IMG/VR virus record: IMGVR_UViG_3300042562_001598
Location: 124,001-188,000 of that record
DNA length: 64,000 bases
Direction: 5' to 3' (one strand)
In this document: positions 1,873-59,517 of the stretch, in pieces
How positions within the stretch are numbered: the stretch's first letter is position 1
Layout of the letters: each line of letters opens with the position of its first letter
Program-made: the position numbers and the translations under genes
Notes under the pieces: generated by a model
Databases searched by the model: none
Told to the model about the DNA's origin: nothing
The model's input: the letters and a program-made list of their open reading frames with translations, nothing else

Positions 1873-2553
1873 ATGAAATTACAGGAAAATATAGACAGAA
1901 TGAAATCAATGATGGGTTTAATTGGTGAGGGTACGGATAAACTTACCAATAAATTAATTGATAATTTTAGTAAAGAGTTTAATTACACTAGATTAGCTAA
2001 CCCAAATATTGAGAAGTTAAACAATGGGCTTTATTATGTTATGGAATATCGTAAAAATAAAAACACTATTGAAGTGTTGGATAACTATTTCTCCGATGTT
2101 TTTTCAGAATTGCATTTACCTCAAAATGTGTATGAAAAGATTAGAAAAGATTTGATTATTGGTATAATCAAAAACTCCGAAATGGAACCCAATGATGATA
2201 CAATTATATGTGTTAAAGGAAATAGTTTTAATTCTAAATGTTTGGATACATTTTATTATGGTGGTGATGACTTTAATGAAGATGAGGAAAAAAATATTGA
2301 GATAACTTTCAACGCGTTAGATAAAGGCCATTTTTATGTAAATTATCTTGTAAATTATAAATTTGGTTTTATTGAGATTGATGGTTATTTAAAGCCTTAC
2401 AATACAGGTAGAGGTGCTGTTTATGAATTTCATCCTGATATTAATAATGATGATGATGATAATGAAGCTCAAGAATATTATGATGAAAATTATGAAGATA
2501 TTGAACAAGAGATATTGGATGAATTCTATAAAACAAACCCCAGTCAGAAATGA
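1873..2553 (+). CDS. Hypothetical acidic protein with MKLQENIDRMKSMMGL leader
   Basis: 226-aa ORF, leader family, very acidic C-terminus. Confidence 0.7.
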   Translation: MKLQENIDRMKSMMGLIGEGTDKLTNKLIDNFSKEFNYTRLANPNIEKLNNGLYYVMEYRKNKNTIEVLDNYFSDVFSELHLPQNVYEKIRKDLIIGIIKNSEMEPNDDTIICVKGNSFNSKCLDTFYYGGDDFNEDEEKNIEITFNALDKGHFYVNYLVNYKFGFIEIDGYLKPYNTGRGAVYEFHPDINNDDDDNEAQEYYDENYEDIEQEILDEFYKTNPSQK

Positions 2554-2622
2554 TTGGGTTTTTTATTTATAATTCGTTTTATTATGTCTATTATTATCAA
2601 ATAAAAAGTAATTAATAGGTTT

Positions 2623-4311
2623 ATGAATATATTGAGTTTATTTGACGGGATATCTTGTGGGCAAATTGCCTTGAATAAAGCGGGAATTAAATATGACAAT
2701 TATTACGCTTCAGAAATTAATAAATATTCTATACAAGTAACCTCAAAAAATTATCCTGATACAATTCAACTTGGGAATGTGTCTGAAATAAATGTAAATG
2801 AATTACCTAATATTGATTTATTAATTGGTGGTAGTCCTTGTCAGTCTTTTAGTAATATGGGGGACAACACTGGATTTGAGGGTAAAAGTAAATTATTTTG
2901 GGAGTTCGTTAGAATATTAAACGAGGTAAAACCTAAATATTTTTTACTTGAAAATGTGGTTATGAAAAAAGAGTGGCAAGATGTAATATCTGAAGCTGTT
3001 GGTGTTAAACCCATCAAGATAAATAGTGCGTTACTTTCGCATCAGAGGAGAAATCGTTTATATTGGACCAATATACCAGGAATTACACAACCAAATGACT
3101 TAGATTTAGACTTCAGAGATATTATTGAACAAAATGTTCACCCTAAATATAATCTTACTAAAAGAGCTGTTGAAAGAGTTAGGGAAAAACAAGGTTATGA
3201 TTTGGTTGCTAAAAAAGCTAAATGTCTTTTTGCGACATATTATAAAAACAATAGTAATTCCAGGGAAGGTCAGATAGTTGAACAAAATGGTGTGTTGAGA
3301 AGATTAACTCCCAACGAATGTGAGATATTACAAACGGTTCCCTTGAACTATACAGATTGTTTAAGTGATACACAAAGATACAAAACTTTGGGTGATGGTT
3401 GGACGGTAGATGTTATTGCACATATATTTGAGAGGTTGAAAGAACCTAAAAAAAGAAAATTAACGGTCTTATCATTATTTGACGGGATGAGTTGTGGTCA
3501 GATTGCCCTTAATAAAGCTGGTATTGAGTATGATAATTATTATGCTTCTGAAATTGATAAACACGCGATTTCAGTAACACAATATAACTATCCAAATACT
3601 ATTCAAATGGGTAGTATAACTGAATTAAAAAGTTCTCAATTACCTAAAATTGATTTGTTATTTGGTGGTTCACCTTGTCAATCATTCTCAAATGCAGGTA
3701 ATGGAACTGGGTTTGATGGTAAGTCAGGGCTATTCTATGAATATGTTAGATTATTGAAAGAATGTAAACCTACATATTTTATGCTTGAAAATGTTAAGAT
3801 GAAAAAAGAATGGCAGGATATTATTTCAGATGAATTAGGTGTTCAACCAATTAAGATAAATTCAAATCTTGTAGGAGCCCAAAATCGTGAGAGACTTTAT
3901 TGGTCAAATATTCCAATTGTAGGGTTACCTAATGATAAAGAAGTTTATATTGAAGATATACTTGATATTACTTTTGATAGTAAGTATTGGTTGAAAGAAA
4001 GAAATTCTGAATTACTTTCTAAGAAAGTTAATATAGAAGGAGCTCCGGCTATTTGTTGTATTGATGTTTATAATAAGAAGTACAAGAAAGACAGAAAAAG
4101 TCCTACATTAACTTTACCACATCATAATTCATTAAGATTACTTCAAGATGGTAAGTTTAGAAAACTAACTCCTAATGAGTGTGAGAGACTACAAACGGTT
4201 CCTGTTGATTATACTAATATTGGTATTTCAGATATTCATAGATACTCAATGTTGGGTAATGGGTGGACTGTTGATGTAATTGCTCATATATTTCAAGGAC
4301 TAAAAGAATAG
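2623..4311 (+). CDS. C5 cytosine DNA methyltransferase with two complete tandem MTase domains
   Basis: Two sets of LSLFDG.SCG (motif I), GGSPCQ (IV), ENV (VI), QxRxR (VIII), LTPxECExLQ and G(D/N)GWTVDV (IX/X). Confidence 0.92.
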   Translation: MNILSLFDGISCGQIALNKAGIKYDNYYASEINKYSIQVTSKNYPDTIQLGNVSEINVNELPNIDLLIGGSPCQSFSNMGDNTGFEGKSKLFWEFVRILNEVKPKYFLLENVVMKKEWQDVISEAVGVKPIKINSALLSHQRRNRLYWTNIPGITQPNDLDLDFRDIIEQNVHPKYNLTKRAVERVREKQGYDLVAKKAKCLFATYYKNNSNSREGQIVEQNGVLRRLTPNECEILQTVPLNYTDCLSDTQRYKTLGDGWTVDVIAHIFERLKEPKKRKLTVLSLFDGMSCGQIALNKAGIEYDNYYASEIDKHAISVTQYNYPNTIQMGSITELKSSQLPKIDLLFGGSPCQSFSNAGNGTGFDGKSGLFYEYVRLLKECKPTYFMLENVKMKKEWQDIISDELGVQPIKINSNLVGAQNRERLYWSNIPIVGLPNDKEVYIEDILDITFDSKYWLKERNSELLSKKVNIEGAPAICCIDVYNKKYKKDRKSPTLTLPHHNSLRLLQDGKFRKLTPNECERLQTVPVDYTNIGISDIHRYSMLGNGWTVDVIAHIFQGLKE

Positions 4312-5214
4312 ATATGGAAAAGATAAATGTATTAAGTTTGTTTGATGGAATGAGTTGTGGTCAAATAGCTCTGAATAGAGCTGGTATTGATTACAAGAAC
4401 TATTACGCATCAGAAATAGATAAAGATGGTATAAAGGTAACGATGAATAACTTTCCTAATACTAACCAAGTTGGTAGTGTTACGGATTTGGTTGGTAGTG
4501 ATTTACCTAAAATTGATTTATTAATTGGTGGTAGTCCTTGCCAATCGTTTTCAAATGCGGGAAATGGTAAAGGTTTTGAAGGTAAGTCTGGGTTATTTTG
4601 GGAATATGTTAGAATATTAAAAGAAGTTCAACCAAAGTATTTTTTACTTGAAAATGTAAAGATGCGGAAAGAATGGCAGGATATTATTTCGGAAGCTTTA
4701 GGTGTTGAACCGGTCTCAATTAACTCAAAATATTTTGTTCCTCAAAATAGACCAAGATTATATTGGACCAATATTCCTATTAATGAAATACCAAATTCTT
4801 ACACCCATTGTTTAAACGATGTGTTAGAAGAAGCGACATCAGATTATTATTTAACTGATAAACAAAAAGCTATCCTTGATTTAAATTATAAATGGAGTGA
4901 AAATGAAATTATAAGACATAAAGCTGGAAAACACCAACAAGACAATATCTACAGGTATGATGGTATAATGTGTTGTTTATCGGCGTCAAGTCACGGAGCG
5001 GCAAGACACTTAACTAAAACATATTTACCTAATGGTAAGTTAAGACGATTGACTGAAAATGAAGTTGAAAAACTACAAAGTGTTCCGGTTAATTACACTA
5101 ATTATGTTTCATCGTCAAAAAGATATGAAATGTTGGGTAATGGGTGGACTGTTGATGTAATTGCTCATATATTTCAAGGACTAAAAGAATAGATATGGAA
5201 AAGATAAATGTATT
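4248..5214 (+). repeat. 86-bp identical direct repeat (4248-4333 and 5129-5214) spanning MTase gene junctions
   Basis: aatgttgggtaatgggtggactg...aaagaatagatatggaaaagataaatgtatt occurs twice, 881 bp apart. Confidence 0.9.
4314..5192 (+). CDS. C5 cytosine DNA methyltransferase
   Basis: LSLFDGMSCG, GGSPCQ, LENV, QNRPR, GNGWTVDV. Confidence 0.93.
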   Translation: MEKINVLSLFDGMSCGQIALNRAGIDYKNYYASEIDKDGIKVTMNNFPNTNQVGSVTDLVGSDLPKIDLLIGGSPCQSFSNAGNGKGFEGKSGLFWEYVRILKEVQPKYFLLENVKMRKEWQDIISEALGVEPVSINSKYFVPQNRPRLYWTNIPINEIPNSYTHCLNDVLEEATSDYYLTDKQKAILDLNYKWSENEIIRHKAGKHQQDNIYRYDGIMCCLSASSHGAARHLTKTYLPNGKLRRLTENEVEKLQSVPVNYTNYVSSSKRYEMLGNGWTVDVIAHIFQGLKE

Positions 5215-7123
5215 GAGTTTGTTTGATGGGATGAGTTGTGGTCAGATTGCTCTGAATAGAGCTGGTATTGAGTATGGTAATTATTATGCTTCTGAAATTG
5301 ATAAACACGCAATTAAAGAAACCATGGCGAACTATCCCAATACAATCCAGGTTGGTGATGTTACAAAGATTACAGCGTCAGATTTACCAAAGATAGACTT
5401 ATTAATTGGTGGTAGTCCATGTTTTACCGCGGGTAATTTAGTGATGACTAATGATGGTTATAAACCAATAGAAGATATTGTTGTTGGTGATATGGTATTG
5501 ACTCATAAAAATAGGTATAAAAAAGTTTTAAGAATTGGTGGTGAAATTAAAGAGACGATACGAGTAAAATCCCAAGGGTCAAGTATGATAGAAACAACTA
5601 GAAACCATCCATTTTATTGTTTTGAGAGTAATGGTGAGAATTCTGACTTTTGTTGGAAAAATATTGGTGATTTTAATAAAAAAGATAAAGTTGTATCTAT
5701 AAATTGGGGTGTAAATATTGATTTTGAGAACTTTTCAAATATTGATTTATACATATTAGGTCGTTTTTTAGCGGATGGTTGTTGTTACAAAACAAAAAGA
5801 AAAGATAGAGATAATTCTTACATCTATAAGTTTAAAATAAGTGTTGGGAAACATGAAATAGATGACTTTAAGAGTAAAGTTGATGATAGATTTACCTATA
5901 TTGAAGAAAAAACTGTATATAATGCTTTTATATATAAAAAAGAATGGGTTGAGATAGGTGAAAAATTTGGCCACTTAGCTCATAATAAATTTATACCTAA
6001 TTTCATATTAGATTTACCTATTGATAGACTTAAAATTTTCATCAATGGATATATGGATGGTGATGGTCATGTTAGAAAACAAGCTTCTAAAGTCAATGTA
6101 TATAAAAGAAATACGACTGTTAGTGAAAAACTAGCTCTTACATTATCTTTAGCTATACAAAAATGTTACAATGGGGTGTCAATTAATTATACAAAAAGAG
6201 AAAATACTTGTGTTATTGAAGGTAGAGTTGTAAATCAAAAAGGGACTTATGAAGTTTCATATACTGAAAATAAAACAAAATTTAGTAAGTATAAAATAAT
6301 AAATGATTATACAATTTACAACCTGACTAAAAGTGTTTCATTTGTTGAAACTGGAACTAATCCTGTTTATAATATAGAGGTAGAAGAAGATAATTCATAT
6401 GTGGTTAATAATCTAATTGTTCATAATTGCCAAGGATTTTCTTTTAGTGGAAAACAATTAAACTTTGAGGACCCAAGAAGTAAATTGTTCTTTGAGTTTG
6501 TTAGACTATTAAAGGAGTGTAATCCGAAATACTTTTTACTTGAGAATGTTGTAATGAAAAAAGAATATGAACAGGTAATAACTGATTACTTGGGAGTAGA
6601 ACCCATTCAGATTAATTCCACTTTGGTGGCAGCCCAAAATCGCGTGAGATTGTATTGGACCAATATACCAAATGTTCAACAACCTGAAGATAGAAACATA
6701 AGGTTAATTGATATTTTAGAAGATGATGTAATGATTGGCGATACAATTGTTAGAAAGGAGAACCTGAACAAAGGAACTATACTTGGTAGGAGACTAAATA
6801 ACGAGGGTAAGAGAGACGATTACAATAAAAGTGTGCCAATAGTTCAGTGCCTTGAGATAAGAGCGTCAAATAGAGAAAAAAGTAATTGTATAACAACCGT
6901 GGCCAAAGATAATGTTTTATCTACATTACCAATAGGTCGGCATGTTGATGCGTTTAATAAGAAATTACCTTTTAGATATTATACGACTACAGAATATAGT
7001 AGATTACAGACTGTTCCAGATGATTATTTCAAGGTTTCAAGTGATAATCAGATAAGAAAAATGATTGGTAATGGGTGGACTGTTGATGTTATTGCTCACA
7101 TATTCAATAATATACAACTATAA
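5195..7123 (+). CDS. C5 cytosine DNA methyltransferase containing an intein
   Basis: MTase motifs interrupted at GGSP|C...VHN|CQGFS. Confidence 0.92.
   Translation: MEKINVLSLFDGMSCGQIALNRAGIEYGNYYASEIDKHAIKETMANYPNTIQVGDVTKITASDLPKIDLLIGGSPCFTAGNLVMTNDGYKPIEDIVVGDMVLTHKNRYKKVLRIGGEIKETIRVKSQGSSMIETTRNHPFYCFESNGENSDFCWKNIGDFNKKDKVVSINWGVNIDFENFSNIDLYILGRFLADGCCYKTKRKDRDNSYIYKFKISVGKHEIDDFKSKVDDRFTYIEEKTVYNAFIYKKEWVEIGEKFGHLAHNKFIPNFILDLPIDRLKIFINGYMDGDGHVRKQASKVNVYKRNTTVSEKLALTLSLAIQKCYNGVSINYTKRENTCVIEGRVVNQKGTYEVSYTENKTKFSKYKIINDYTIYNLTKSVSFVETGTNPVYNIEVEEDNSYVVNNLIVHNCQGFSFSGKQLNFEDPRSKLFFEFVRLLKECNPKYFLLENVVMKKEYEQVITDYLGVEPIQINSTLVAAQNRVRLYWTNIPNVQQPEDRNIRLIDILEDDVMIGDTIVRKENLNKGTILGRRLNNEGKRDDYNKSVPIVQCLEIRASNREKSNCITTVAKDNVLSTLPIGRHVDAFNKKLPFRYYTTTEYSRLQTVPDDYFKVSSDNQIRKMIGNGWTVDVIAHIFNNIQL
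5420..6427 (+). mobile_element. Intein (336 aa) with LAGLIDADG-type homing endonuclease
   Basis: Starts CFTAGNLV; TTRNHPF block B; LGRFLADG and INGYMDGDG LAGLIDADG motifs; VYNIEVEEDNSYVVNNLIVHN terminus followed by +1 Cys. Confidence 0.93.
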
Positions 7124-8151: not shown

Positions 8152-9198
8152 ATGAAAAAGAACGCTTTAAAAGAGGAAGTATTACGAATTCACGAACTTA
8201 CTTATGGTAAGAAAATTTTGGAGGAACAAAACTTCCTATCAAAAATATTTGGTGATGATAAAGAAAAGACAAGTAAAGTTGACGACCCAAAAAAGGCTGA
8301 TATTGTAACTTCAGATGTTAAAAAATTCTATCAAAATATTGAGGACGCTATTTCATCGGGTGGATTATCACAACAAAAAATCGGAACGATGAATTTCCAA
8401 AAGGGTGTTGAGTCTATGCAAATTGGTTTAATGTTATTAGGTTATGATTTACCTAAACATGGTGTTGATGGGTTATTTGGTCCTGAAACGGCGAATGCTG
8501 TTGGTAAGTTTATTAGTGATAACTTAAAGGACTCTGTTGACTTAACCAAAGATAGTTCAAAAAAAGTTGAAGCGACACCGGAGATGTTGGGTAAATTATT
8601 AGAAATGTTAGAAACGAAGGGTATTTCTTCTGAAGAACTTAAAAAATATATTGATTCTGTTACTACAGGTGGTGGTGCTAACTTTACTGATTTAGATTTA
8701 TCAACAACTGAAGGATATGAGGCTTATGCTGAAATATGTCAAAAGTTTATAGATAGTAAACAACCAAATTTATTGGGTATTACTGGAACTATGTTGGCTG
8801 ATGGTGCTAAACGAGCTTTTGATAATCGTCATAAGTATGTCCCACCTGAATTAGCCTTGGCTCAATTAGCTGCTGAAGGTGGTATAGGTAATAAAAACGC
8901 TCAAAGTAGACCAATAAGAACTAAAAACCCATTCAATGTTGGAAATGTTGATTCTGGTGGAAATGTTTTCCATGGGGATGTACAAAGTGGTATTAACACT
9001 TATTATGATTTAATAGCTAAAGATTATTTGGTTAAAGGTAAAACCGCTTCAGATTTGGTAAAACAATTTGTTAATAAGAGTGGTAATAGATATGCGACTT
9101 CAGCTTATGAACCATTTATTAATAAACTTGCTGGTGAGGCAAATAGAATTGCTACCCCAATTTATTTAGCAATGTCTAACAAAGAACGAGAAGTTTAA
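8152..9198 (+). CDS. Peptidoglycan-binding domain + lysozyme-superfamily (glucosaminidase-like) hydrolase with leader; possibly virion-associated
   Basis: MQIGLMLLGY..GVDGLFGPETANAV (PG_binding_1-like); LALAQLAAEGG and KNPFNVGN..RYAT (GH73-like). Confidence 0.7.
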   Translation: MKKNALKEEVLRIHELTYGKKILEEQNFLSKIFGDDKEKTSKVDDPKKADIVTSDVKKFYQNIEDAISSGGLSQQKIGTMNFQKGVESMQIGLMLLGYDLPKHGVDGLFGPETANAVGKFISDNLKDSVDLTKDSSKKVEATPEMLGKLLEMLETKGISSEELKKYIDSVTTGGGANFTDLDLSTTEGYEAYAEICQKFIDSKQPNLLGITGTMLADGAKRAFDNRHKYVPPELALAQLAAEGGIGNKNAQSRPIRTKNPFNVGNVDSGGNVFHGDVQSGINTYYDLIAKDYLVKGKTASDLVKQFVNKSGNRYATSAYEPFINKLAGEANRIATPIYLAMSNKEREV

Positions 9199-9771: not shown

Positions 9772-12700
9772 ATGGAAAAAAAGATAACATTAGGGAAGGC
9801 AATCAAAATTAAGGTTAAAGATTCGGTATCATCTTATGTGTGGAATAGGTTATATGAAAAATTAGATAAGTTAGTAAGTAATAAAATATATAATTCAACC
9901 ATTCATTTACAAAAAGAATCGGAGGTTTATGAGATGTATTACGCAATATGGTTGTCAATTAGGCGTAAATTATGAAAACAAAGATAGAATTAGGCAAATC
10001 GGTTATGAATGAAGTAAGGAGTTCAGTTAGGCGTTCAGTAAATATTTTAGTGAGTAATTCAGTGTGTGGTTCAGTGAGTAGTTCAGTGGATAGTTCAGTG
10101 AGGAGTATAGTGTGTGGTTCAGTAAATATTTCAGTGTATAATTCAGTATATGATTCAGTGGATAGTTCAGTGTGGAGTTCAGTATCTGATTCAATAAATA
10201 ATAATATATGAAAACAAAGTTAGTCTTGGGGAAACCAGTTAATGGTAATGTGGTTGAATCAGTTAAGAATTCGGTGTGGATTTTAACACATATTTCATTG
10301 TATCGTTCAGTGAATAGTTCAGTATACAATTCAGTGTTTAATTCGGTGTGGCGTCCAAGTTTTATATTATGAAAACAAAGATTAAATTGGGGGAATCGGT
10401 TAGGGTGTTACTGTATAAGTCAATAAGGAGTTCAGTTGATGTTTCACTGATGTTTACAGCGTATGGTTCAGTGCATAAGTCAGTGTGGACTTCAGTTAGG
10501 ACTTCAGTTCATAATCCAACAAATATTAGCATATGAAAACAAAGATAGACCTGGGGGAATCGGTTAAGGGTAAAGTTAGGAGTTCAGTGAGGGATTCAGT
10601 GAGACATTCAATATCCCCTTCAATGTACAATTCAGTTAAAAGTGTTCTGCATAGTGAAATATTTTCATCACTTGAGAATTCTATTAGGCATTCAGTTAGT
10701 AATTCAATCTATTGGACTATAGATAACTTCAATAAACTTTAGATTATGAAAACAAAGGTAGACCTGGGGAAATCAATTAAGGATAAAGTGTATGATTCAG
10801 TACTTAGTTCAGTGAGGAGTTCAGTGAATAGTTCAGTGTATGGTTCAGTTAGTAGTTCAGTGTATGATTCAGTGGGGAGTTCAGTGTATAGTTCAGTTAG
10901 GAATTTAACAAACATTAGATTATGAAAACAAAGATTACATTGGGAGAATCAGTTGAAGATAAGATTTTCCAAATAGTTACTGATGTGATTAGTAAAAAAA
11001 GTTATGACTTGTTAATCAGGGGAGTTTCATCAAATATGTTAAAGGGTGTTTCAGATGGGGTATATGATTACGCCTATAATTCAATATTACCTTCATTGAG
11101 TAGGGAAGTGTGGTTATTAGCGGTCACTAATTCAACAATAAAAAATTATGAAAACAAAGATAGACCTGGGGAAATCGGTTAAGTGTAAAGTGTATGAGTC
11201 ATTGTATTGTTCAGTAAATAGTTCAGTGTTTAGTTCAGTGAGTGGTTCAGAGATGCGTTCCGTTTGGAGTTCAATGAATAGTTCAGTGTGGATGTTAACA
11301 AATTTTAGATTATGAAAACAAAGATTAGATTGGGGAGGTCAGTTAAGGATAAAGTGAGGAGTTCAGTTTGGAATTTAGTTAGTCATTCATTGATGAGTTC
11401 CGTGCATGGTTCAGTGAAAAATCCAGTGTATTTTTCAGTAAGGAGTTCAATTTATGAATCATTAAAAATATAATATGAAAAATTTAGGTAATTCAATTAA
11501 AGATAATGTTGGGGATTTAGTTAAAGTTTCAGTTTGGCGTTCAACGAGTGAATTAATTAATGATTCAACAGGTGGTTTAACAATCCTTTCAACTTGGAAA
11601 ACAACAGGTCTATCATTACGAGATTCAGTTAGTAATTCAATTTATAATCAATTAAGAGTTCTTCAAGATGAAAATTAAAAAATTAGGAAAACCTGTTAAG
11701 CGTAAGTTGTTTAGTTCGGTAAATAATTTAATTTATTATTCAATAGGTGTTAAGCTCTATAAAGATAAGACTAGTAATATCTGGGATTTTGGTTACGAGT
11801 CAGTAAGAAAACCAATTGATAATTCAATAAATTTTAGATTATGAAAACAAAGGTAGGTCTGGGGAAATCAGTTAGTGATAAAGTGAGGAGGTCAGTGGAG
11901 AATTCAATTAAAAGTTCAGTTCGGTGTTCAGTAGATGATTTAGTGAGTAGTTCAGTGAGTTATTCAGTGAGGAGTTCAGTGATGAGTTCAGTGTATTGGC
12001 CAGTGTGTGATTTAGTGTGGAGTTCAGTGAGTATTTCAGTTAATATTTCAGTGTGGCGTTCAGTGAATATTTCAGTACATAATTCAGTAAGGTATTCAGT
12101 GAGTGATTCAATAATAAATAGTATATGAAAACAAAGGTAGACCTGGGTAAATCGGTTAAGGGTGAAGTATGGAATTTAGTTAATCATTCAGTGTATAGTT
12201 CAGTGTATGATTCAGTGAGTTGTTCAGTTAGTAGTTCAGTTATTGATTCAGTGGATGATTCGGTGTGGAGTTCCGTGCATGTTTCAGTTTGGATTTTATT
12301 ATATAGGTCAGTGGATGATTCGGTGTGGAGTTCAGTACATGGTTCAGTTAATAATTCAATAGAGGATAGTATATGAAAACAAAGGTAGACTTGGGAGAAT
12401 CAGTTAAGAATAAACTTAAGAATTCAGTGTGTAGTTCAGTTAGTCAGTCCGTGAGTATTTCATTTACAAGTACAAAATATTATTTAGTGGATAGGTCAGT
12501 CTATACATCACTGAAATGGTCAGTGAATGATTTGGTATGGTTCTCAGTGTATGAAATTATTTGTGATTCAATAGAAGATAAATTATGAAAACGAGGGTAA
12601 AATTAGGAAAATCAGTTAAGAATGAGGTTAAAGAATTAGTGTGTTGTAATGTGAATTTATTTTATTTTTCAGTGGGAAAATTTGTATATGATTTAGCTAG

Positions 12701-13395
12701 TGATAAAGTAAAAAATCCGGTGTACAGAACAAGCGATATAATATGGAGGTCGGTTCGTGACTCAACTATTCAATTTAATAAAAAATAGACTATGAAATTA
12801 GGAAAATCAGTTAAGTTTGAGGTGATTAAAGCGGTTGATGAAGGAATATTTGATGTTGTTACAGAATTGATTGATAACTCAATTAAGAATTTAGTATGGG
12901 ATTCAGTATTTTATTCAGTGTGGGATGCGATGAATGTTTCATTATTATCACCGATATTTGAACCAATAGAGGATAACTTATGGGAAGAAAATTAATATTA
13001 GGTAAATCAGTTAGTTATAGAGTTACTAATTCAATAGGTGATTCAATCTGGAGTATTAATTATGGGTCCATTAACCAGTTAGTGGATAGTTCAATTATTT
13101 TTCCAATAAAAGACTTATCGGAGGAAATATTAGATGATTTAGTATTTGGTTTGGTGAGTAGTACAATTAATATTTCAATAACAAATAGACTATGAAAACA
13201 AAATTAATATTGGGTAATTTAGTGGGAACCGAATTAAACAGGTCAATATGGGAATCAGTTAGAGTTTCAATTGAGATGAAAGTAGGTGTTTCAGTATGGG
13301 AAACAATAAACCAATCAGTTTATGAACCGATACAGGAAATAGTAAATGATTCAATCAACAACCAACTATATTGGTTAATAAAAAGTAAAGTATAA
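9772..13395 (+). CDS. SVxx-repeat small-protein array 1: 18 tandem, mostly ATGA-coupled paralogous genes
   Basis: Starts 9772, 9972, 10208, 10369, 10533, 10746, 10922, 11148, 11312, 11475, 11668, 11841, 12125, 12373, 12585, 12792, 12980, 13192 (five short ORFs read by hand); MKTKxxLGKSV head + S-V-x-x repeats. Confidence 0.88.
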
Positions 13396-19741: not shown

Positions 19742-20583
19742 GGGGATAATATAAATAATAATGTTATGACAATAGATTTAAGATTTGGTGATACGATAGA
19801 ACAAATGAAATTGATATCTGATAAAAGTATTGACTTTATTTGTTGTGATTTACCTTATGGTTCAACAAAAAACAATTGGGATATTATCATACCATTTGAC
19901 CAACTTTGGGAACAATATAAGAGAATTATTAAAGATGATGGGGCTATCGCGTTATTTGGGACAGGTTTGTTTGCTTATAAGTTAGCGTTATCAAATGAGA
20001 AAATGTATAAGTATGAAATAATTTGGTCAAAATCTAAAAGTGGTAGTTCATTTACTGCAAAATATAGACCCGTTCAGAAACATGAAAACATTTTAATATT
20101 TGGGAAAGGTAAAGTGGTATATAATCCACAATTAGAACCGGGTGAACCATACTATAGGAAACGGAAAGCTAATGATGGGGATAAACCAAATAATCATAAA
20201 TTAGGTGTTGTATCTGAAAGTGAGACCAAGAATGATGGGTTTAGATATCCGTCAACTATTCAATTTTTCCAACAAAAATGGAGAAGGCAAGACCAACTAC
20301 ATAGTACACAAAAACCTGTGGAACTTATAGAATGGTTAATAAAATCATATAGTAATGAAAGTGATACTATTTTGGATAATACATTTGGTAGTTGCACCGC
20401 GGGAATTGCTAGTATAAACACTAATAGGAATTTTATAGGAATTGAGAATAACCAACATTATTTTGATGTTTCTATAGAGAGAATTAATAAAATATTACAA
20501 TATAACGACCCGAACCATATGAAAGACATTATCTTAATTACTCAATAAAAAAAGGGGGGATAATATAAATAATAATGTTATGA
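19742..20583 (+). repeat. 28-bp direct repeat flanking the amino-MTase gene (19742-19769, 20556-20583)
   Basis: ggggataatataaataataatgttatga at both ends, each containing a start codon. Confidence 0.88.
19766..20548 (+). CDS. N6-adenine/N4-cytosine DNA methyltransferase (beta class)
   Basis: CCDLPYG, HSTQKPVEL, ILDNTFGSCTAG, NFIGIE; ATG 19766 preferred over 19724. Confidence 0.92.
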   Translation: MTIDLRFGDTIEQMKLISDKSIDFICCDLPYGSTKNNWDIIIPFDQLWEQYKRIIKDDGAIALFGTGLFAYKLALSNEKMYKYEIIWSKSKSGSSFTAKYRPVQKHENILIFGKGKVVYNPQLEPGEPYYRKRKANDGDKPNNHKLGVVSESETKNDGFRYPSTIQFFQQKWRRQDQLHSTQKPVELIEWLIKSYSNESDTILDNTFGSCTAGIASINTNRNFIGIENNQHYFDVSIERINKILQYNDPNHMKDIILITQ

Positions 20584-58647: not shown

Positions 58648-59517
58648 ATGTGGAATAAAGACGATTATAATAAGTTTCATTTAATTGACATTATTGATGG
58701 TATGAAAAAAATACCTGATAATAGTGTTGATATAGTTCTTAGTGACCCCCCATATAATATTGGTAAAGATTTTGGTATCTGTAAAGATAATATGGAATTA
58801 ACTTCTTATTTGGAATGGTGTGATTTATGGATTGACGAATGTAAACGAATTATAAAACCAACAGGTGTTATTTACATTTACGGGTTCAGTGAAATTTTAG
58901 CACATATTTCAGTAAGGATTGATTTACCCAAAAGATGGTTAATATGGCACTACACCAATAAAACAACACCATCTTATAAGGGGTGGCAGAGAAGTCACGA
59001 GAGTATTTTATATATTTGGAAAGATAAACCAGTGTTTAACAGAGATGCTGTTAGAGTTCCGTATACCGAAACATTCCTAAAAAATTCATCAGGTAAAAAA
59101 AGAACCAATACCGGAACTGCAAGATTTGGTAATTCATCAGATACGGTATACACCGCTCATGAAAATGGTGCGTTACCTAGAGATGTATTTACAGAAATTT
59201 CAACATTAGCCGGAGGTGCTGGTAGAGAAAGATATTTCTTATACAAAGGAGTTGTTTACCCTTCAAAAGAGATTAAGAAATTTCCCGTTGATGAATGTAT
59301 TAAACACCCAACGCAAAAACCTTCTAAATTAACTGAAAAGTTAATAAAAGCATCATTACCGGAGAAAGATGGTGTTGTAGTTATACCTTTTGGAGGTTCA
59401 GGAACTGAAGGTGTTGTGTGTAAAAGAATGGGGGTTGATTTCATCGGATTTGATATTAACGATGAATATATTAAGTTAGCGGAAGGGGCTTTAGAACAAT
59501 ATAAAACAATATATTAA
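58648..59517 (+). CDS. N6A/N4C DNA methyltransferase (beta class)
   Basis: SDPPYN, HPTQKP, IPFGGSGT, FIGFDIN. Confidence 0.93.
   Translation: MWNKDDYNKFHLIDIIDGMKKIPDNSVDIVLSDPPYNIGKDFGICKDNMELTSYLEWCDLWIDECKRIIKPTGVIYIYGFSEILAHISVRIDLPKRWLIWHYTNKTTPSYKGWQRSHESILYIWKDKPVFNRDAVRVPYTETFLKNSSGKKRTNTGTARFGNSSDTVYTAHENGALPRDVFTEISTLAGGAGRERYFLYKGVVYPSKEIKKFPVDECIKHPTQKPSKLTEKLIKASLPEKDGVVVIPFGGSGTEGVVCKRMGVDFIGFDINDEYIKLAEGALEQYKTIY

What the first reader, a model, noticed from the sequence alone, without database searches (positions are those of the whole stretch)
2623..7123. Accordion of four C5-methyltransferase domains with different target-recognition regions and an identical 86-bp junction repeat
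Seen: four MTase domains share conserved motifs but have dissimilar sequence between motifs VIII and IX (the target-recognition domain in C5 MTases). Gene 4314..5192 is bounded by an identical 86-bp repeat (4248-4333 = 5129-5214) covering motif X, the stop and the next start. Inference: recombination across conserved motifs adds, removes or swaps specificities, giving tunable multi-site protection against host restriction.
Basis: partly seen in the sequence, partly recalled or inferred. Interest (0 to 1): 0.62.

Follow-up and report, generated by a model that had tools for sequence, protein, structure and literature searches.

The report
Recombining phage methyltransferase array with intein
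A freshwater jumbo phage carries four cytosine DNA-methyltransferase domains in a row, one split by a mobile intein, and sibling phages in the same lakes carry reshuffled versions, so this likely anti-restriction kit is rebuilt by recombination at its conserved motifs.

Summary
Window 2623-7123 holds three co-directional genes encoding four complete C5-MTase domains. Gene 1 fuses d1 and d2, gene 2 is d3, and gene 3 is d4. The domains are 52-59% identical, and their target-recognition regions (TRDs) are unrelated. The 86-bp repeat flanking d3 is exact and far beyond chance.

The array is not an assembly artefact. At least nine other contigs carry it at 99.9-100% identity.

It is also not fixed. 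Closely related lake phages have five alleles at the same slot:
- A: [d1.d2][d3][d4::intein]
- B: [d1.d2][d4::intein]
- C: [d1.dX][d4, no intein]
- D: [dX.d4::intein]
- E: [dX'.d4]

The alleles are mosaics of 97-100% identical blocks next to 50-85% blocks. Breakpoints fall at motifs I, VIII and X.

The recombination inference is therefore supported. The exchanged unit is mostly a whole domain, not a TRD alone. Different specificities and protection from restriction remain untested.

This is a new variant of a known kind, of moderate to good interest.

The parts
2623..4311 (+). Gene 1 (562 aa): two complete C5-MTase domains fused in frame, d1 (2623-3447) and d2 (3448-4311). They are joined by the linker KEPKKRKL (3439-3462).
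   Evidence: ORF. Pfam PF00145 gives E 6.5e-85 with two full-length matches. Domain split and motifs are, and the linker coordinates. The identical protein is found on 7 other contigs.
3067..3297 (+). TRD of d1 (77 aa, TRD cluster 3).
   Evidence: Coordinates are. The cluster is shared only with d1 of the 558-aa relatives P0098 and P0114-P0118.
3904..4158 (+). TRD of d2 (85 aa, TRD cluster 6).
   Evidence: It is 68-71% identical to the TRDs of L027b, P0082 and P0096; the last two proteins carry inteins.
4248..4333 (+). Junction repeat copy J1. It covers the end of motif X of d2 (GNGWTVDVIAHIFQGLKE), the stop codon TAG, the spacer AT, the ATG and the first codons of d3.
   Evidence: It is exactly identical to 5129-5214. 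Both copies are present in 8 independent contigs.
4314..5192 (+). Gene 2 (292 aa): d3, a single C5-MTase domain. This module is present in allele A and absent in allele B.
   Evidence: Pfam PF00145 gives E 7.6e-45. The exact protein is found on 10 contigs. It is missing from L040, which otherwise matches at 99%. dN/dS is 0.10-0.15 against L011a and L009.
4767..5042 (+). TRD of d3 (92 aa, TRD cluster 4).
   Evidence: It is 76-88% identical to the TRDs of L008, L009, L010 and L011a.
5129..5214 (+). Junction repeat copy J2. It covers the end of motif X of d3, the stop codon, the spacer and the start of d4.
   Evidence: It is exactly identical to 4248-4333. The same junction type joins dX to d4 in allele C.
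5195..7123 (+). Gene 3 (642 aa): d4, a C5-MTase interrupted by an intein. The N-extein is 5195-5419 and the C-extein is 6428-7123.
   Evidence: Pfam finds PF00145 in two pieces, plus Hint_2, Intein_splicing and LAGLIDADG_3. Joining the exteins by eye gives a 306-aa MTase that is 99% identical to the natural uninterrupted 305-aa gene in L041.
5420..6427 (+). Intein of 336 aa. Its features are Cys1 (CFTAGNLV), block B TTRNHPF (5594-5614), two LAGLIDADG motifs (5756-5782 and 6041-6067) and a terminal VHN. The +1 Cys that follows is the catalytic Cys of motif IV.
   Evidence: Intein-less alleles occur in L041 and L044 and in contigs of the same sequencing runs. dN/dS is 0.19 against the L027 intein.
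6659..6973 (+). TRD of d4 (105 aa, TRD cluster 0).
   Evidence: This is the largest cluster, with 32 members, 24 of them in intein-bearing proteins. This TRD is present in all five array alleles.
2539..2558 (+). Terminator-like hairpin followed by a T-run, lying between the upstream gene and the array. This is a weak hint that the array starts its own transcription unit.
   Evidence: Consensus scan only. Neither the terminator-like sites (3 found, 1.5 expected) nor the promoter-like sites (40 found, 39.7 expected) exceed chance.

Best explanation
The region is a modular battery of small, monospecific C5 cytosine DNA methyltransferases in an uncultured freshwater jumbo phage of 282 kb and 30% GC. 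There are four complete catalytic domains, each with its own unrelated TRD. They are encoded by three tightly packed genes whose stop and start codons are 2 nt apart.

The most likely job is self-methylation of phage DNA at several different short sites, to escape host restriction enzymes.

The battery is rebuilt by homologous recombination between co-circulating phages. Motif X at the end of one domain lies directly next to motif I at the start of the next. Together they form about 90-140 nt of near-identical DNA at every domain boundary. Crossovers there, and at motif VIII, insert, delete or replace whole domains. They also convert a stop/start junction into an in-frame linker or back.

The fourth domain also hosts a selfish LAGLIDADG intein placed just before the catalytic cysteine. 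The enzyme can therefore only become active after protein splicing. The intein is present or absent among otherwise 97-99% identical alleles in the same lakes.

Shown: domain anatomy, the repeat, the allele series, the mosaic structure, intein hallmarks, empty-site alleles and purifying selection.

Inferred: catalytic activity, four distinct target sites, protection from restriction, splicing and homing.
For: Anatomy.

Real, not artefact: the same 4.5-kb array occurs at 99.9-100% identity in at least nine contigs from different JGI and ENA samples. These include megahit k141 assemblies, whose k exceeds the 86-nt repeat.

Not fixed: alleles A-E sit between the same flanking genes.

Mosaicism:
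- Allele C is 100% identical to the window over d1. It is 83-93% like E in the next N-core, 94-100% like D over the dX TRD, and 96-100% like A/B over the junction and the d4 exteins.
- A and D are 97-100% identical over d4 plus intein, but 50-80% to the left of it.

The d3 indel is bounded by the repeat: L040 is 99.05% identical to the window with 4334-5214 removed.

Selection: dN/dS is 0.05-0.15 for d2, d3 and d4 against relatives.

Distinct TRD families are each conserved in other phages. More distant phages carry 1, 2, 3 or 4 tandem domains.

Intein:
- Pfam Hint, Intein_splicing and LAGLIDADG matches.
- A conserved C1...HN|C+1 arrangement at the same site in 99 of the 123 proteins held, which are mostly the related clusters.
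- A natural empty-site allele in L041, and intein-less joints in contigs of runs that also hold the intein.

Context: the genome avoids some restriction-type 4-mers completely (GATC 0 of about 715 expected) but not CCGG, AGCT or GGCC. That is the pattern expected if some sites are escaped by avoidance and others by methylation.
Against: - No methylation data exist, so activity and the number of distinct target sites are unknown.
- Allele B, the clean d3 deletion, rests on a single 3.1-kb contig.
- Logan contigs break at the repeat, so the laid runs say nothing about within-sample d3 gain or loss.
- Within the window's own lineage the array is invariant across many samples. Turnover is therefore evolutionary, not rapid or 'tunable' on short time scales.
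- Most close relatives keep TRD and core together, so TRD-only swapping is the exception.
- The host and its restriction systems are unknown.
Confidence: 0.75

Rival explanations
1. Strand-pair model. The fused or adjacent domains are partners that each methylate one strand of an asymmetric site, as in known two-MTase systems for asymmetric targets. The array would then protect fewer sites than it has domains.
For: Three different in-frame fusions recur (d1.d2, d1.dX, dX.d4), which suggests some benefit of physical linkage. The nearest solved homologues, DNMT3A and DNMT3B, work as dimers; the homology is and the dimer property is from general knowledge.
Against: Partners are interchangeable. 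d1 is fused to d2 in alleles A and B but to dX in C. dX is fused to d4 in D and E but is a separate gene from it in C. d3 stands alone and can be absent. The complex prediction for d1 with d2 gave no answer, which is neither support nor refutation.
Confidence: 0.12
2. The domains are not anti-restriction methylases. They might install a base that is further hypermodified, as in TET-linked or CmoX-type carboxymethyl transfer. Alternatively they might serve phage gene regulation or packaging.
For: Phage C5-MTase homologues with such roles exist (PMC8256090 and PMC12783734, found and read). d1 has GDG instead of GNG in motif X.
Against: No CmoA homologue is present in the 282-kb genome. The Tet_JBP search found nothing, but its control also found nothing, so it is uninformative. 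Neighbouring genes have no Pfam match above the curated cut-off. Turnover of modules with different TRDs fits an arms race over target sites better than a fixed pathway does.
Confidence: 0.08
3. The 86-bp identity is kept by selection on the junction itself, for example for translational coupling or an RNA structure. On this view the array is a static operon and recombination plays no role.
For: Stop and start codons are 2 nt apart, which is compatible with coupling.
Against: Selection on the protein or on coupling does not explain 28 consecutive identical codons, when 35-46% of synonymous codons differ elsewhere. The array is demonstrably different in relatives, with mosaic blocks at 100% identity. 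The same junction joins four different domain pairs.
Confidence: 0.03
4. Assembly artefact: strain variants were joined wrongly at the repeat.
For: The window comes from a metagenome, and exact repeats can mislead assemblers.
Against: The identical arrangement was assembled independently in at least nine contigs from different samples and with different assemblers, including k=141, which exceeds the 86-nt repeat.
Confidence: 0.01

Closest known systems
Orphan C5 DNA methyltransferases of phages (Dcm-type, PF00145), used against host restriction
   Same: Each domain is a complete PF00145 enzyme with all catalytic motifs and one TRD. No restriction endonuclease partner was seen: the ORFs checked on both sides have no Pfam match above the curated cut-off. 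The nearest cultured-phage homologues are 45-53% identical: Synechococcus phage S-CBS2 dcm, Flavobacterium FPSV phages, Pelagibacter phage HTVC134P and Cellulophaga phages.
   Different: There are four domains side by side, two of them fused, one carrying an intein. The population also holds a series of reshuffled alleles at one locus.
Multispecific C5-MTases of Bacillus phages SPR, phi3T, rho11s and SPbeta (several TRDs in one enzyme; from general knowledge, Trautner and colleagues)
   Same: The strategic outcome is the same: one phage locus gives protection at several sites, and specificity modules can be recombined.
   Different: In those enzymes, one catalytic core carries several consecutive TRDs. 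Here every TRD has its own full core from motif I to motif X, and the module that moves is the whole domain.
TRD or domain shuffling in Type I hsdS and Type III mod genes ('domain movement', shufflons; from general knowledge)
   Same: Conserved sequence flanking variable recognition modules serves as the substrate for recombination that changes the methylation repertoire.
   Different: The enzyme class is different (C5 MTase), and the setting is a virus rather than a host. No site-specific recombinase or inverted-repeat switch was seen. Exchange appears to occur between genomes rather than by phase variation within one genome.
Inteins in actinophage N6/N4 DNA methylases (PMC5050341; PMC9957025)
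   Same: A LAGLIDADG intein with patchy distribution sits in a phage orphan methylase, with evidence of within-gene recombination.
   Different: The extein family here is the C5 MTase, and the insertion is directly before the catalytic Cys of motif IV. I found no paper describing this insertion. However, it sits unannotated in cultured phages, in Escherichia phage A4 gp120 and P1-like RCS47 dmt. It also occurs in about 100 metagenomic clusters.
Eukaryotic DNMT3A/3B catalytic domain
   Same: These are the best-scoring solved structures for d3 (E about 4e-24). They share the small size of about 285 aa and a similar motif X: WTVDVIAHIF in d3 against WSVPVIRHLF.
   Different: The TRDs do not align, and there are no regulatory domains. 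No evidence of dimerisation was obtained.

Membership tests
C5 cytosine-specific DNA methyltransferase (PF00145) | Match to the family profile above its curated cut-off | tested here: met
   Scores of 285.8, 154.2 and 122.4 bits against a cut-off of 22. Four full-length domain matches.
C5 cytosine-specific DNA methyltransferase (PF00145) | Ordered motifs I (AdoMet binding), IV (PC catalytic Cys), VI (ENV), VIII (QxRxR), IX and X, with a variable TRD between VIII and IX | tested here: met
   All motifs are present in d1-d4. For d4 this holds after removing residues 76-411. d1 has GDG instead of GNG in motif X.
C5 cytosine-specific DNA methyltransferase (PF00145) | Transfers methyl from AdoMet to C5 of cytosine in a defined DNA sequence | not testable with these tools
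   This needs expression plus bisulfite or EM-seq, or a phage methylome. Purifying selection (dN/dS 0.05-0.15) argues that the genes are functional.
Multispecific phage C5-MTase (SPR / phi3T type) | One catalytic core carrying several tandem TRDs | tested here: not met
   Each core has a single TRD of 77-105 aa and is followed by its own motifs IX and X.
Class 1 intein with LAGLIDADG homing endonuclease | N-terminal Cys/Ser, block B TxxH, C-terminal HN, and a +1 Cys/Ser/Thr | tested here: met
   The features found are C76, TTRNH at residue 134, VHN at 409-411 and C412. They are conserved in 99 related proteins. Pfam Hint_2 scores 35.7 bits, above its cut-off. Intein_splicing scores 29.6 bits, below its cut-off of 35.8.
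Class 1 intein with LAGLIDADG homing endonuclease | Two LAGLIDADG motifs between the splicing halves | tested here: met
   LGRFLADGC at residue 188 and INGYMDGDG at residue 283. Pfam LAGLIDADG_3 scores 22.0 bits, just under its cut-off of 22.5.
Class 1 intein with LAGLIDADG homing endonuclease | Insertion in a conserved site of the host protein, with intein-free alleles whose sequence equals the joined exteins | tested here: met
   The L041 gene of 305 aa is 99% identical to the joined exteins. L044 is 88% identical. Intein-less joints are seen in runs X5, X6 and X8.
Class 1 intein with LAGLIDADG homing endonuclease | Protein splicing and homing-site cleavage | not testable with these tools
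   Needs expression and cleavage assays.
Genomic 'accordion' (tandem amplification of one gene under selection, poxvirus K3L type) | Near-identical tandem copies whose number varies within a population | tested here: not met
   The copies are 59-66% identical at the nucleotide level and carry different TRDs. Domain number does vary, from 2 to 4, but by exchange of different modules.
Site-specific cassette systems (integron, shufflon) | Dedicated recombinase and specific recombination sites next to the array | tested here: not met
   Eight of the ORFs between 148 and 9761 that flank the array have no recombinase domain. No inverted repeats bound the modules. Breakpoints lie in coding motifs.

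The most novel reading that the evidence does not exclude
The array may be a self-diversifying anti-restriction cassette system. On this reading, the back-to-back motif X / motif I boundaries act as portable homology boxes, functionally like cassette boundaries but driven by homology. The intein's homing endonuclease would cut the motif IV DNA of intein-less alleles during co-infection. Those double-strand breaks would seed recombination and co-conversion, reshuffling neighbouring MTase modules. A selfish element would thus accelerate turnover of the phage's methylation repertoire. Splicing at the catalytic cysteine could additionally gate when d4 becomes active.
Probability: 0.15. Interest if true: 0.8.

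Novelty: new variant of a known kind. Interest (0 to 1): 0.6.

Why it matters
Phage methyltransferases are a main route of escape from restriction-modification. How a phage changes its set of protected sites is known mostly from a few Bacillus phage enzymes and from host Type I systems.

Here a natural population shows the process caught in the act. Five alleles of one locus are built from a shared pool of complete MTase modules. They are joined either as separate genes or as fusions, with breakpoints in the conserved motifs.

This gives a directly testable system: each allele predicts a different methylome. It is also a source of compact C5 MTases of about 280 aa with at least 36 TRD types.

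The intein before the catalytic cysteine is widespread in metagenomes and in cultured jumbo coliphages, yet I found no description of it. It may interest work on intein biology and on conditional enzymes.

The complete absence of GATC in 282 kb shows that the same genome combines site avoidance with methylation.

Tried and rejected
- Megablast of the region against cultured phages found no match.
- A search with the upstream flanking gene in viral contigs found only one weak hit, so synteny-anchored sampling failed there. Exact-protein look-ups worked instead.
- Reads were available only as Logan contigs, which break at the 86-bp repeat. They cannot show d3 gain or loss within a sample. They did show the intein-less joint.
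- A pattern scan for the allele-B junction in JGI metagenome contigs gave 0 hits. The allele-A control pattern gave only 1 hit, so this result is uninformative.
- A look-up of L040's upstream protein returned only L040, so allele B has single-contig support.
- Complex prediction for d1 against d2 gave no answer, neither support nor evidence against. It is not used as evidence.
- The promoter and terminator scan was not above chance.
- The Tet_JBP search found nothing in the genome or in the controls, so it is uninformative.
- I could not assign target sites. REBASE is not available, and PDB homologues align only in the core. Per-contig 4-mer counts are too few to link TRD types to sites.
- Literature searches found no description of a C5-MTase motif IV intein or of such arrays. 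That is absence in the searchable library only.
- Assembly artefact and 'static operon' readings were considered and rejected (see rival explanations).
Full report
**Source.** The window is bases 124001-188000 of a 282,192-bp IMG/VR virus record with 30% GC and a CheckV completeness estimate of 96%. All sequencing runs that hold the region are lake-water, freshwater, aquatic or subsurface metagenomes released 2016-2024. This is an uncultured freshwater jumbo phage. Its host is unknown.

**Observation.** Three + strand ORFs fill 2623-7123: 562 aa, 292 aa and 642 aa.
- All three match Pfam PF00145, and the first holds two full-length matches.
- The domain bounds are d1 2623-3447, d2 3448-4311 (fused to d1 through the linker KEPKKRKL), d3 4314-5192 and d4 5195-7123.
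- Motifs I, IV, VI, VIII, IX and X are intact in all four. Pairwise identity is 52-59% at the amino-acid level and 59-66% at the nucleotide level.
- The segments between motifs VIII and IX (77, 85, 92 and 105 aa) show no meaningful mutual similarity. They fall into four separate clusters among the 36 clusters formed by 110 related domains.
- The repeat 4248-4333 = 5129-5214 is exact and continues with four mismatches for about 57 more bases.
- Only 54-65% of codons for identical residues match elsewhere in these paralogues, and the next longest runs of identical codons are 4-10. The run of 28 identical codons in the repeat is therefore not chance, and it is not explained by protein conservation.

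The 642-aa protein is a C5 MTase split by an intein.
- The sequence reads GGSP | C-F-T-A-G ... I-V-H-N | C-Q-G-F-S. A 336-aa insert (nt 5420-6427) sits directly before the catalytic cysteine of motif IV, and that cysteine doubles as the intein's +1 nucleophile.
- The insert has Cys1, a TxxH block B, two LAGLIDADG motifs and a terminal HN. It also has Pfam Hint_2, Intein_splicing and LAGLIDADG_3 matches.
- The word search returned about 100 clusters of C5 MTases with an intein at the identical site. These inteins are 325-359 aa long, all begin with CF and all end in VHN, and 96 of the 99 have a LAGLIDADG-like motif.
- They accompany at least 25 different TRD clusters.
- The same insertion is present but unannotated in cultured phages. 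Escherichia phage A4 gp120 reads GFPC|FPAG...VVHN|CQAW. The dmt gene of P1-like phage RCS47 has a 3288-nt CDS.
- Published methylase inteins that I could find are in actinophage N6/N4 enzymes (PMC5050341, PMC9957025). I found nothing on the C5 motif IV site.

**The array is real.** The exact proteins and the 4.5-kb DNA recur at 99.9-100% identity in at least nine other contigs from different JGI and ENA samples. Both 86-mers are present wherever the contig reaches them. Several of these contigs are megahit k141 assemblies, whose k exceeds the repeat length. Assembly artefact is excluded for this arrangement.

**The array is not fixed.** The same flanking genes bracket five alleles: a 223/226-aa gene upstream, and 51-aa and 86-aa genes downstream.

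| Allele | Where found | Arrangement |
|---|---|---|
| A | window and its copies | [d1.d2][d3][d4::intein] |
| B | L040 | [d1.d2][d4::intein] |
| C | L041, L042, L043 | [d1.dX, 558 aa][d4, 305 aa, no intein] |
| D | L025, L026 | one 924-aa protein, dX.d4::intein |
| E | L044 and clusters P0026-P0030 | one 590-aa protein, dX'.d4, no intein |

- L040 is 99.05% identical (21 substitutions and one 9-bp indel in 3152 nt) to the window with 4334-5214 removed. So d3 is a presence/absence difference bounded exactly by the repeat. This allele rests on one contig.
- d4 (TRD cluster 0) is in all alleles, d1 in A-C, dX in C-E, d2 in A-B and d3 in A only.
- More distant phages carry four separate tandem genes (L011), three (L027), two (L024) or one. 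In L011 the first gene has d3's TRD, and the last has d4's TRD without an intein.

**Mosaic structure.** Tile-by-tile comparison gives the following.
- Allele C is 100% identical to A across d1.
- It is then closest to E (83-93%) in the N-core of its second domain.
- It is then 94-100% identical to D across the dX TRD.
- It is then 96-100% identical to A/B across the junction and the d4 exteins.
- A and D are 97-100% identical from about 5320 to 7060 (d4 plus intein), but only 50-80% identical to the left.
- Breakpoints fall just after motif I (GQIALN), near motif VIII, and inside motif X (GNGWTVDVI).
- The stop-AT-ATG junction joins d2|d3 and d3|d4 (A), d2|d4 (B) and dX|d4 (C). Two in-frame linkers (KEPKKRKL and KPIKKKVNKKL) replace it in the fusions.
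- Blocks at or near 100% identity abutting blocks at 50-85% are the signature of recent homologous exchange between co-circulating genomes.
- Among close relatives the TRD usually travels with its own core. The usual unit of exchange is therefore the whole domain.

**Intein polymorphism.**
- The L041 gene equals the joined exteins of the window's d4 at 99% amino-acid identity (dN 0.005, dS 0.117).
- Contigs of three runs that hold the intein-bearing allele also contain a joint, or a loose end, that skips 5423-6433. The bases across it are exactly those of the L041 empty site.
- Between A and D the intein differs at 3 of 1008 nt and the adjacent 125 nt of N-extein at 0 of 125. The C-extein differs at 10 of 663. 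This is compatible with recent homing and co-conversion but does not prove it.
- The motif IV DNA of d1-d3 differs from the d4 empty site downstream of the cut (CQSFSN against CQGFSF). This may explain why they are uninvaded.

**Function (inferred).**
- dN/dS of 0.05-0.15 for d2, d3 and d4 against relatives shows the genes are under purifying selection.
- No restriction endonuclease, recombinase, CmoA or other recognisable partner was found nearby. The TET search was uninformative.
- The genome has a further C5 MTase 7 kb upstream of the window, and two N6/N4 MTases inside it.
- It contains no GATC at all: 0 against about 715 expected genome-wide, and 0 against 175 ± 12 in the window. TCGA, GCGC, ACGT and CATG are strongly depleted. 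CCGG, AGCT and GGCC are not.
- The simplest reading is that the phage escapes some host enzymes by losing their sites and others by methylation. The non-avoided C-containing palindromes are candidate targets. This link is speculative.

**Comparison with known systems.**
- Each domain is a member of the C5-MTase family.
- The locus is not a multispecific MTase of the Bacillus phage type, because each TRD has its own core.
- It is not a gene-amplification accordion, because the copies are old paralogues.
- It is not a site-specific cassette system, because no recombinase or recombination sites were found.
- It works like TRD shuffling in Type I and Type III systems, but with whole C5 domains, in a virus, and between genomes.
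- The nearest solved structures are DNMT3A/3B catalytic domains, ahead of M.HhaI.
- A test of whether d1 and d2 bind each other gave no answer.

**Verdict.** The recombination inference is supported by natural variants. Distinct specificities and anti-restriction function remain untested. The finding is a new variant of a known kind, with an undescribed but widespread intein site as a bonus.

Noticed in passing
whole genome G000 (window 1-64000 included): GATC is completely absent: 0 sites against about 715 expected in 282 kb, and 0 against 175 ± 12 in the window. TCGA (O/E 0.13), GCGC (0.23), ACGT (0.27) and CATG (0.31) are strongly depleted. CCGG (1.17), AGCT (1.04) and GGCC (0.80) are not. 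The related contigs L029, L041, L044, L026 and L040 also have no GATC.
   Followed up: partly
window 9772-13395: At least 17 tandem paralogous small genes of 53-95 aa. Most begin MKTK(I/V)xLG(K/E)SV and are rich in SVxxSV repeats. The set differs between relatives. Function unknown.
   Followed up: no
window 8152-9198: A 348-aa ORF with no Pfam match above cut-off. It is present in allele-A contigs but absent from L025 and L041, so it is a second indel close to the array.
   Followed up: partly
window 19829-20473 and 58726-59484; G000:C1:116907-117845 (outside the window): Two N6_N4 DNA methyltransferase genes lie inside the window, and a fifth C5-MTase gene of a different subfamily lies about 7 kb upstream of it. 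The genome therefore encodes at least seven MTase domains.
   Followed up: no
L045 2300-4198 (Escherichia phage A4 gp120); L050 (phage RCS47 dmt): Cultured phages carry an intein at the same motif IV site of their C5-MTase genes, annotated only as methyltransferase. In A4 the sequence reads GFPC|FPAG...VVHN|CQAW. The RCS47 dmt CDS is 3288 nt, and the intein-plus-flank query (P0003:60-430) matches inside it at 30% identity.
   Followed up: partly
L025 8416-9818: All 15 GATC sites of this 10-kb relative lie in its last 1.6 kb, and the first 8.4 kb has none. That end may be a chimeric join or foreign DNA.
   Followed up: no
window 4314-5192 (d3 protein): The best-scoring solved structures are the eukaryotic DNMT3A/3B catalytic domains (E about 4e-24), ahead of M.HhaI. 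Motif X is similar: WTVDVIAHIF in d3 against WSVPVIRHLF. JGI names several relatives 'DNMT 3A'.
   Followed up: no
window 4366-4383 and 5247-5264: A 7-bp-stem palindrome (AGCTCT-GAAT-AGAGCT, containing two AGCT sites) lies in the motif I coding region of both d3 and d4. The terminator scan flagged it, but it has no T-run.
   Followed up: no
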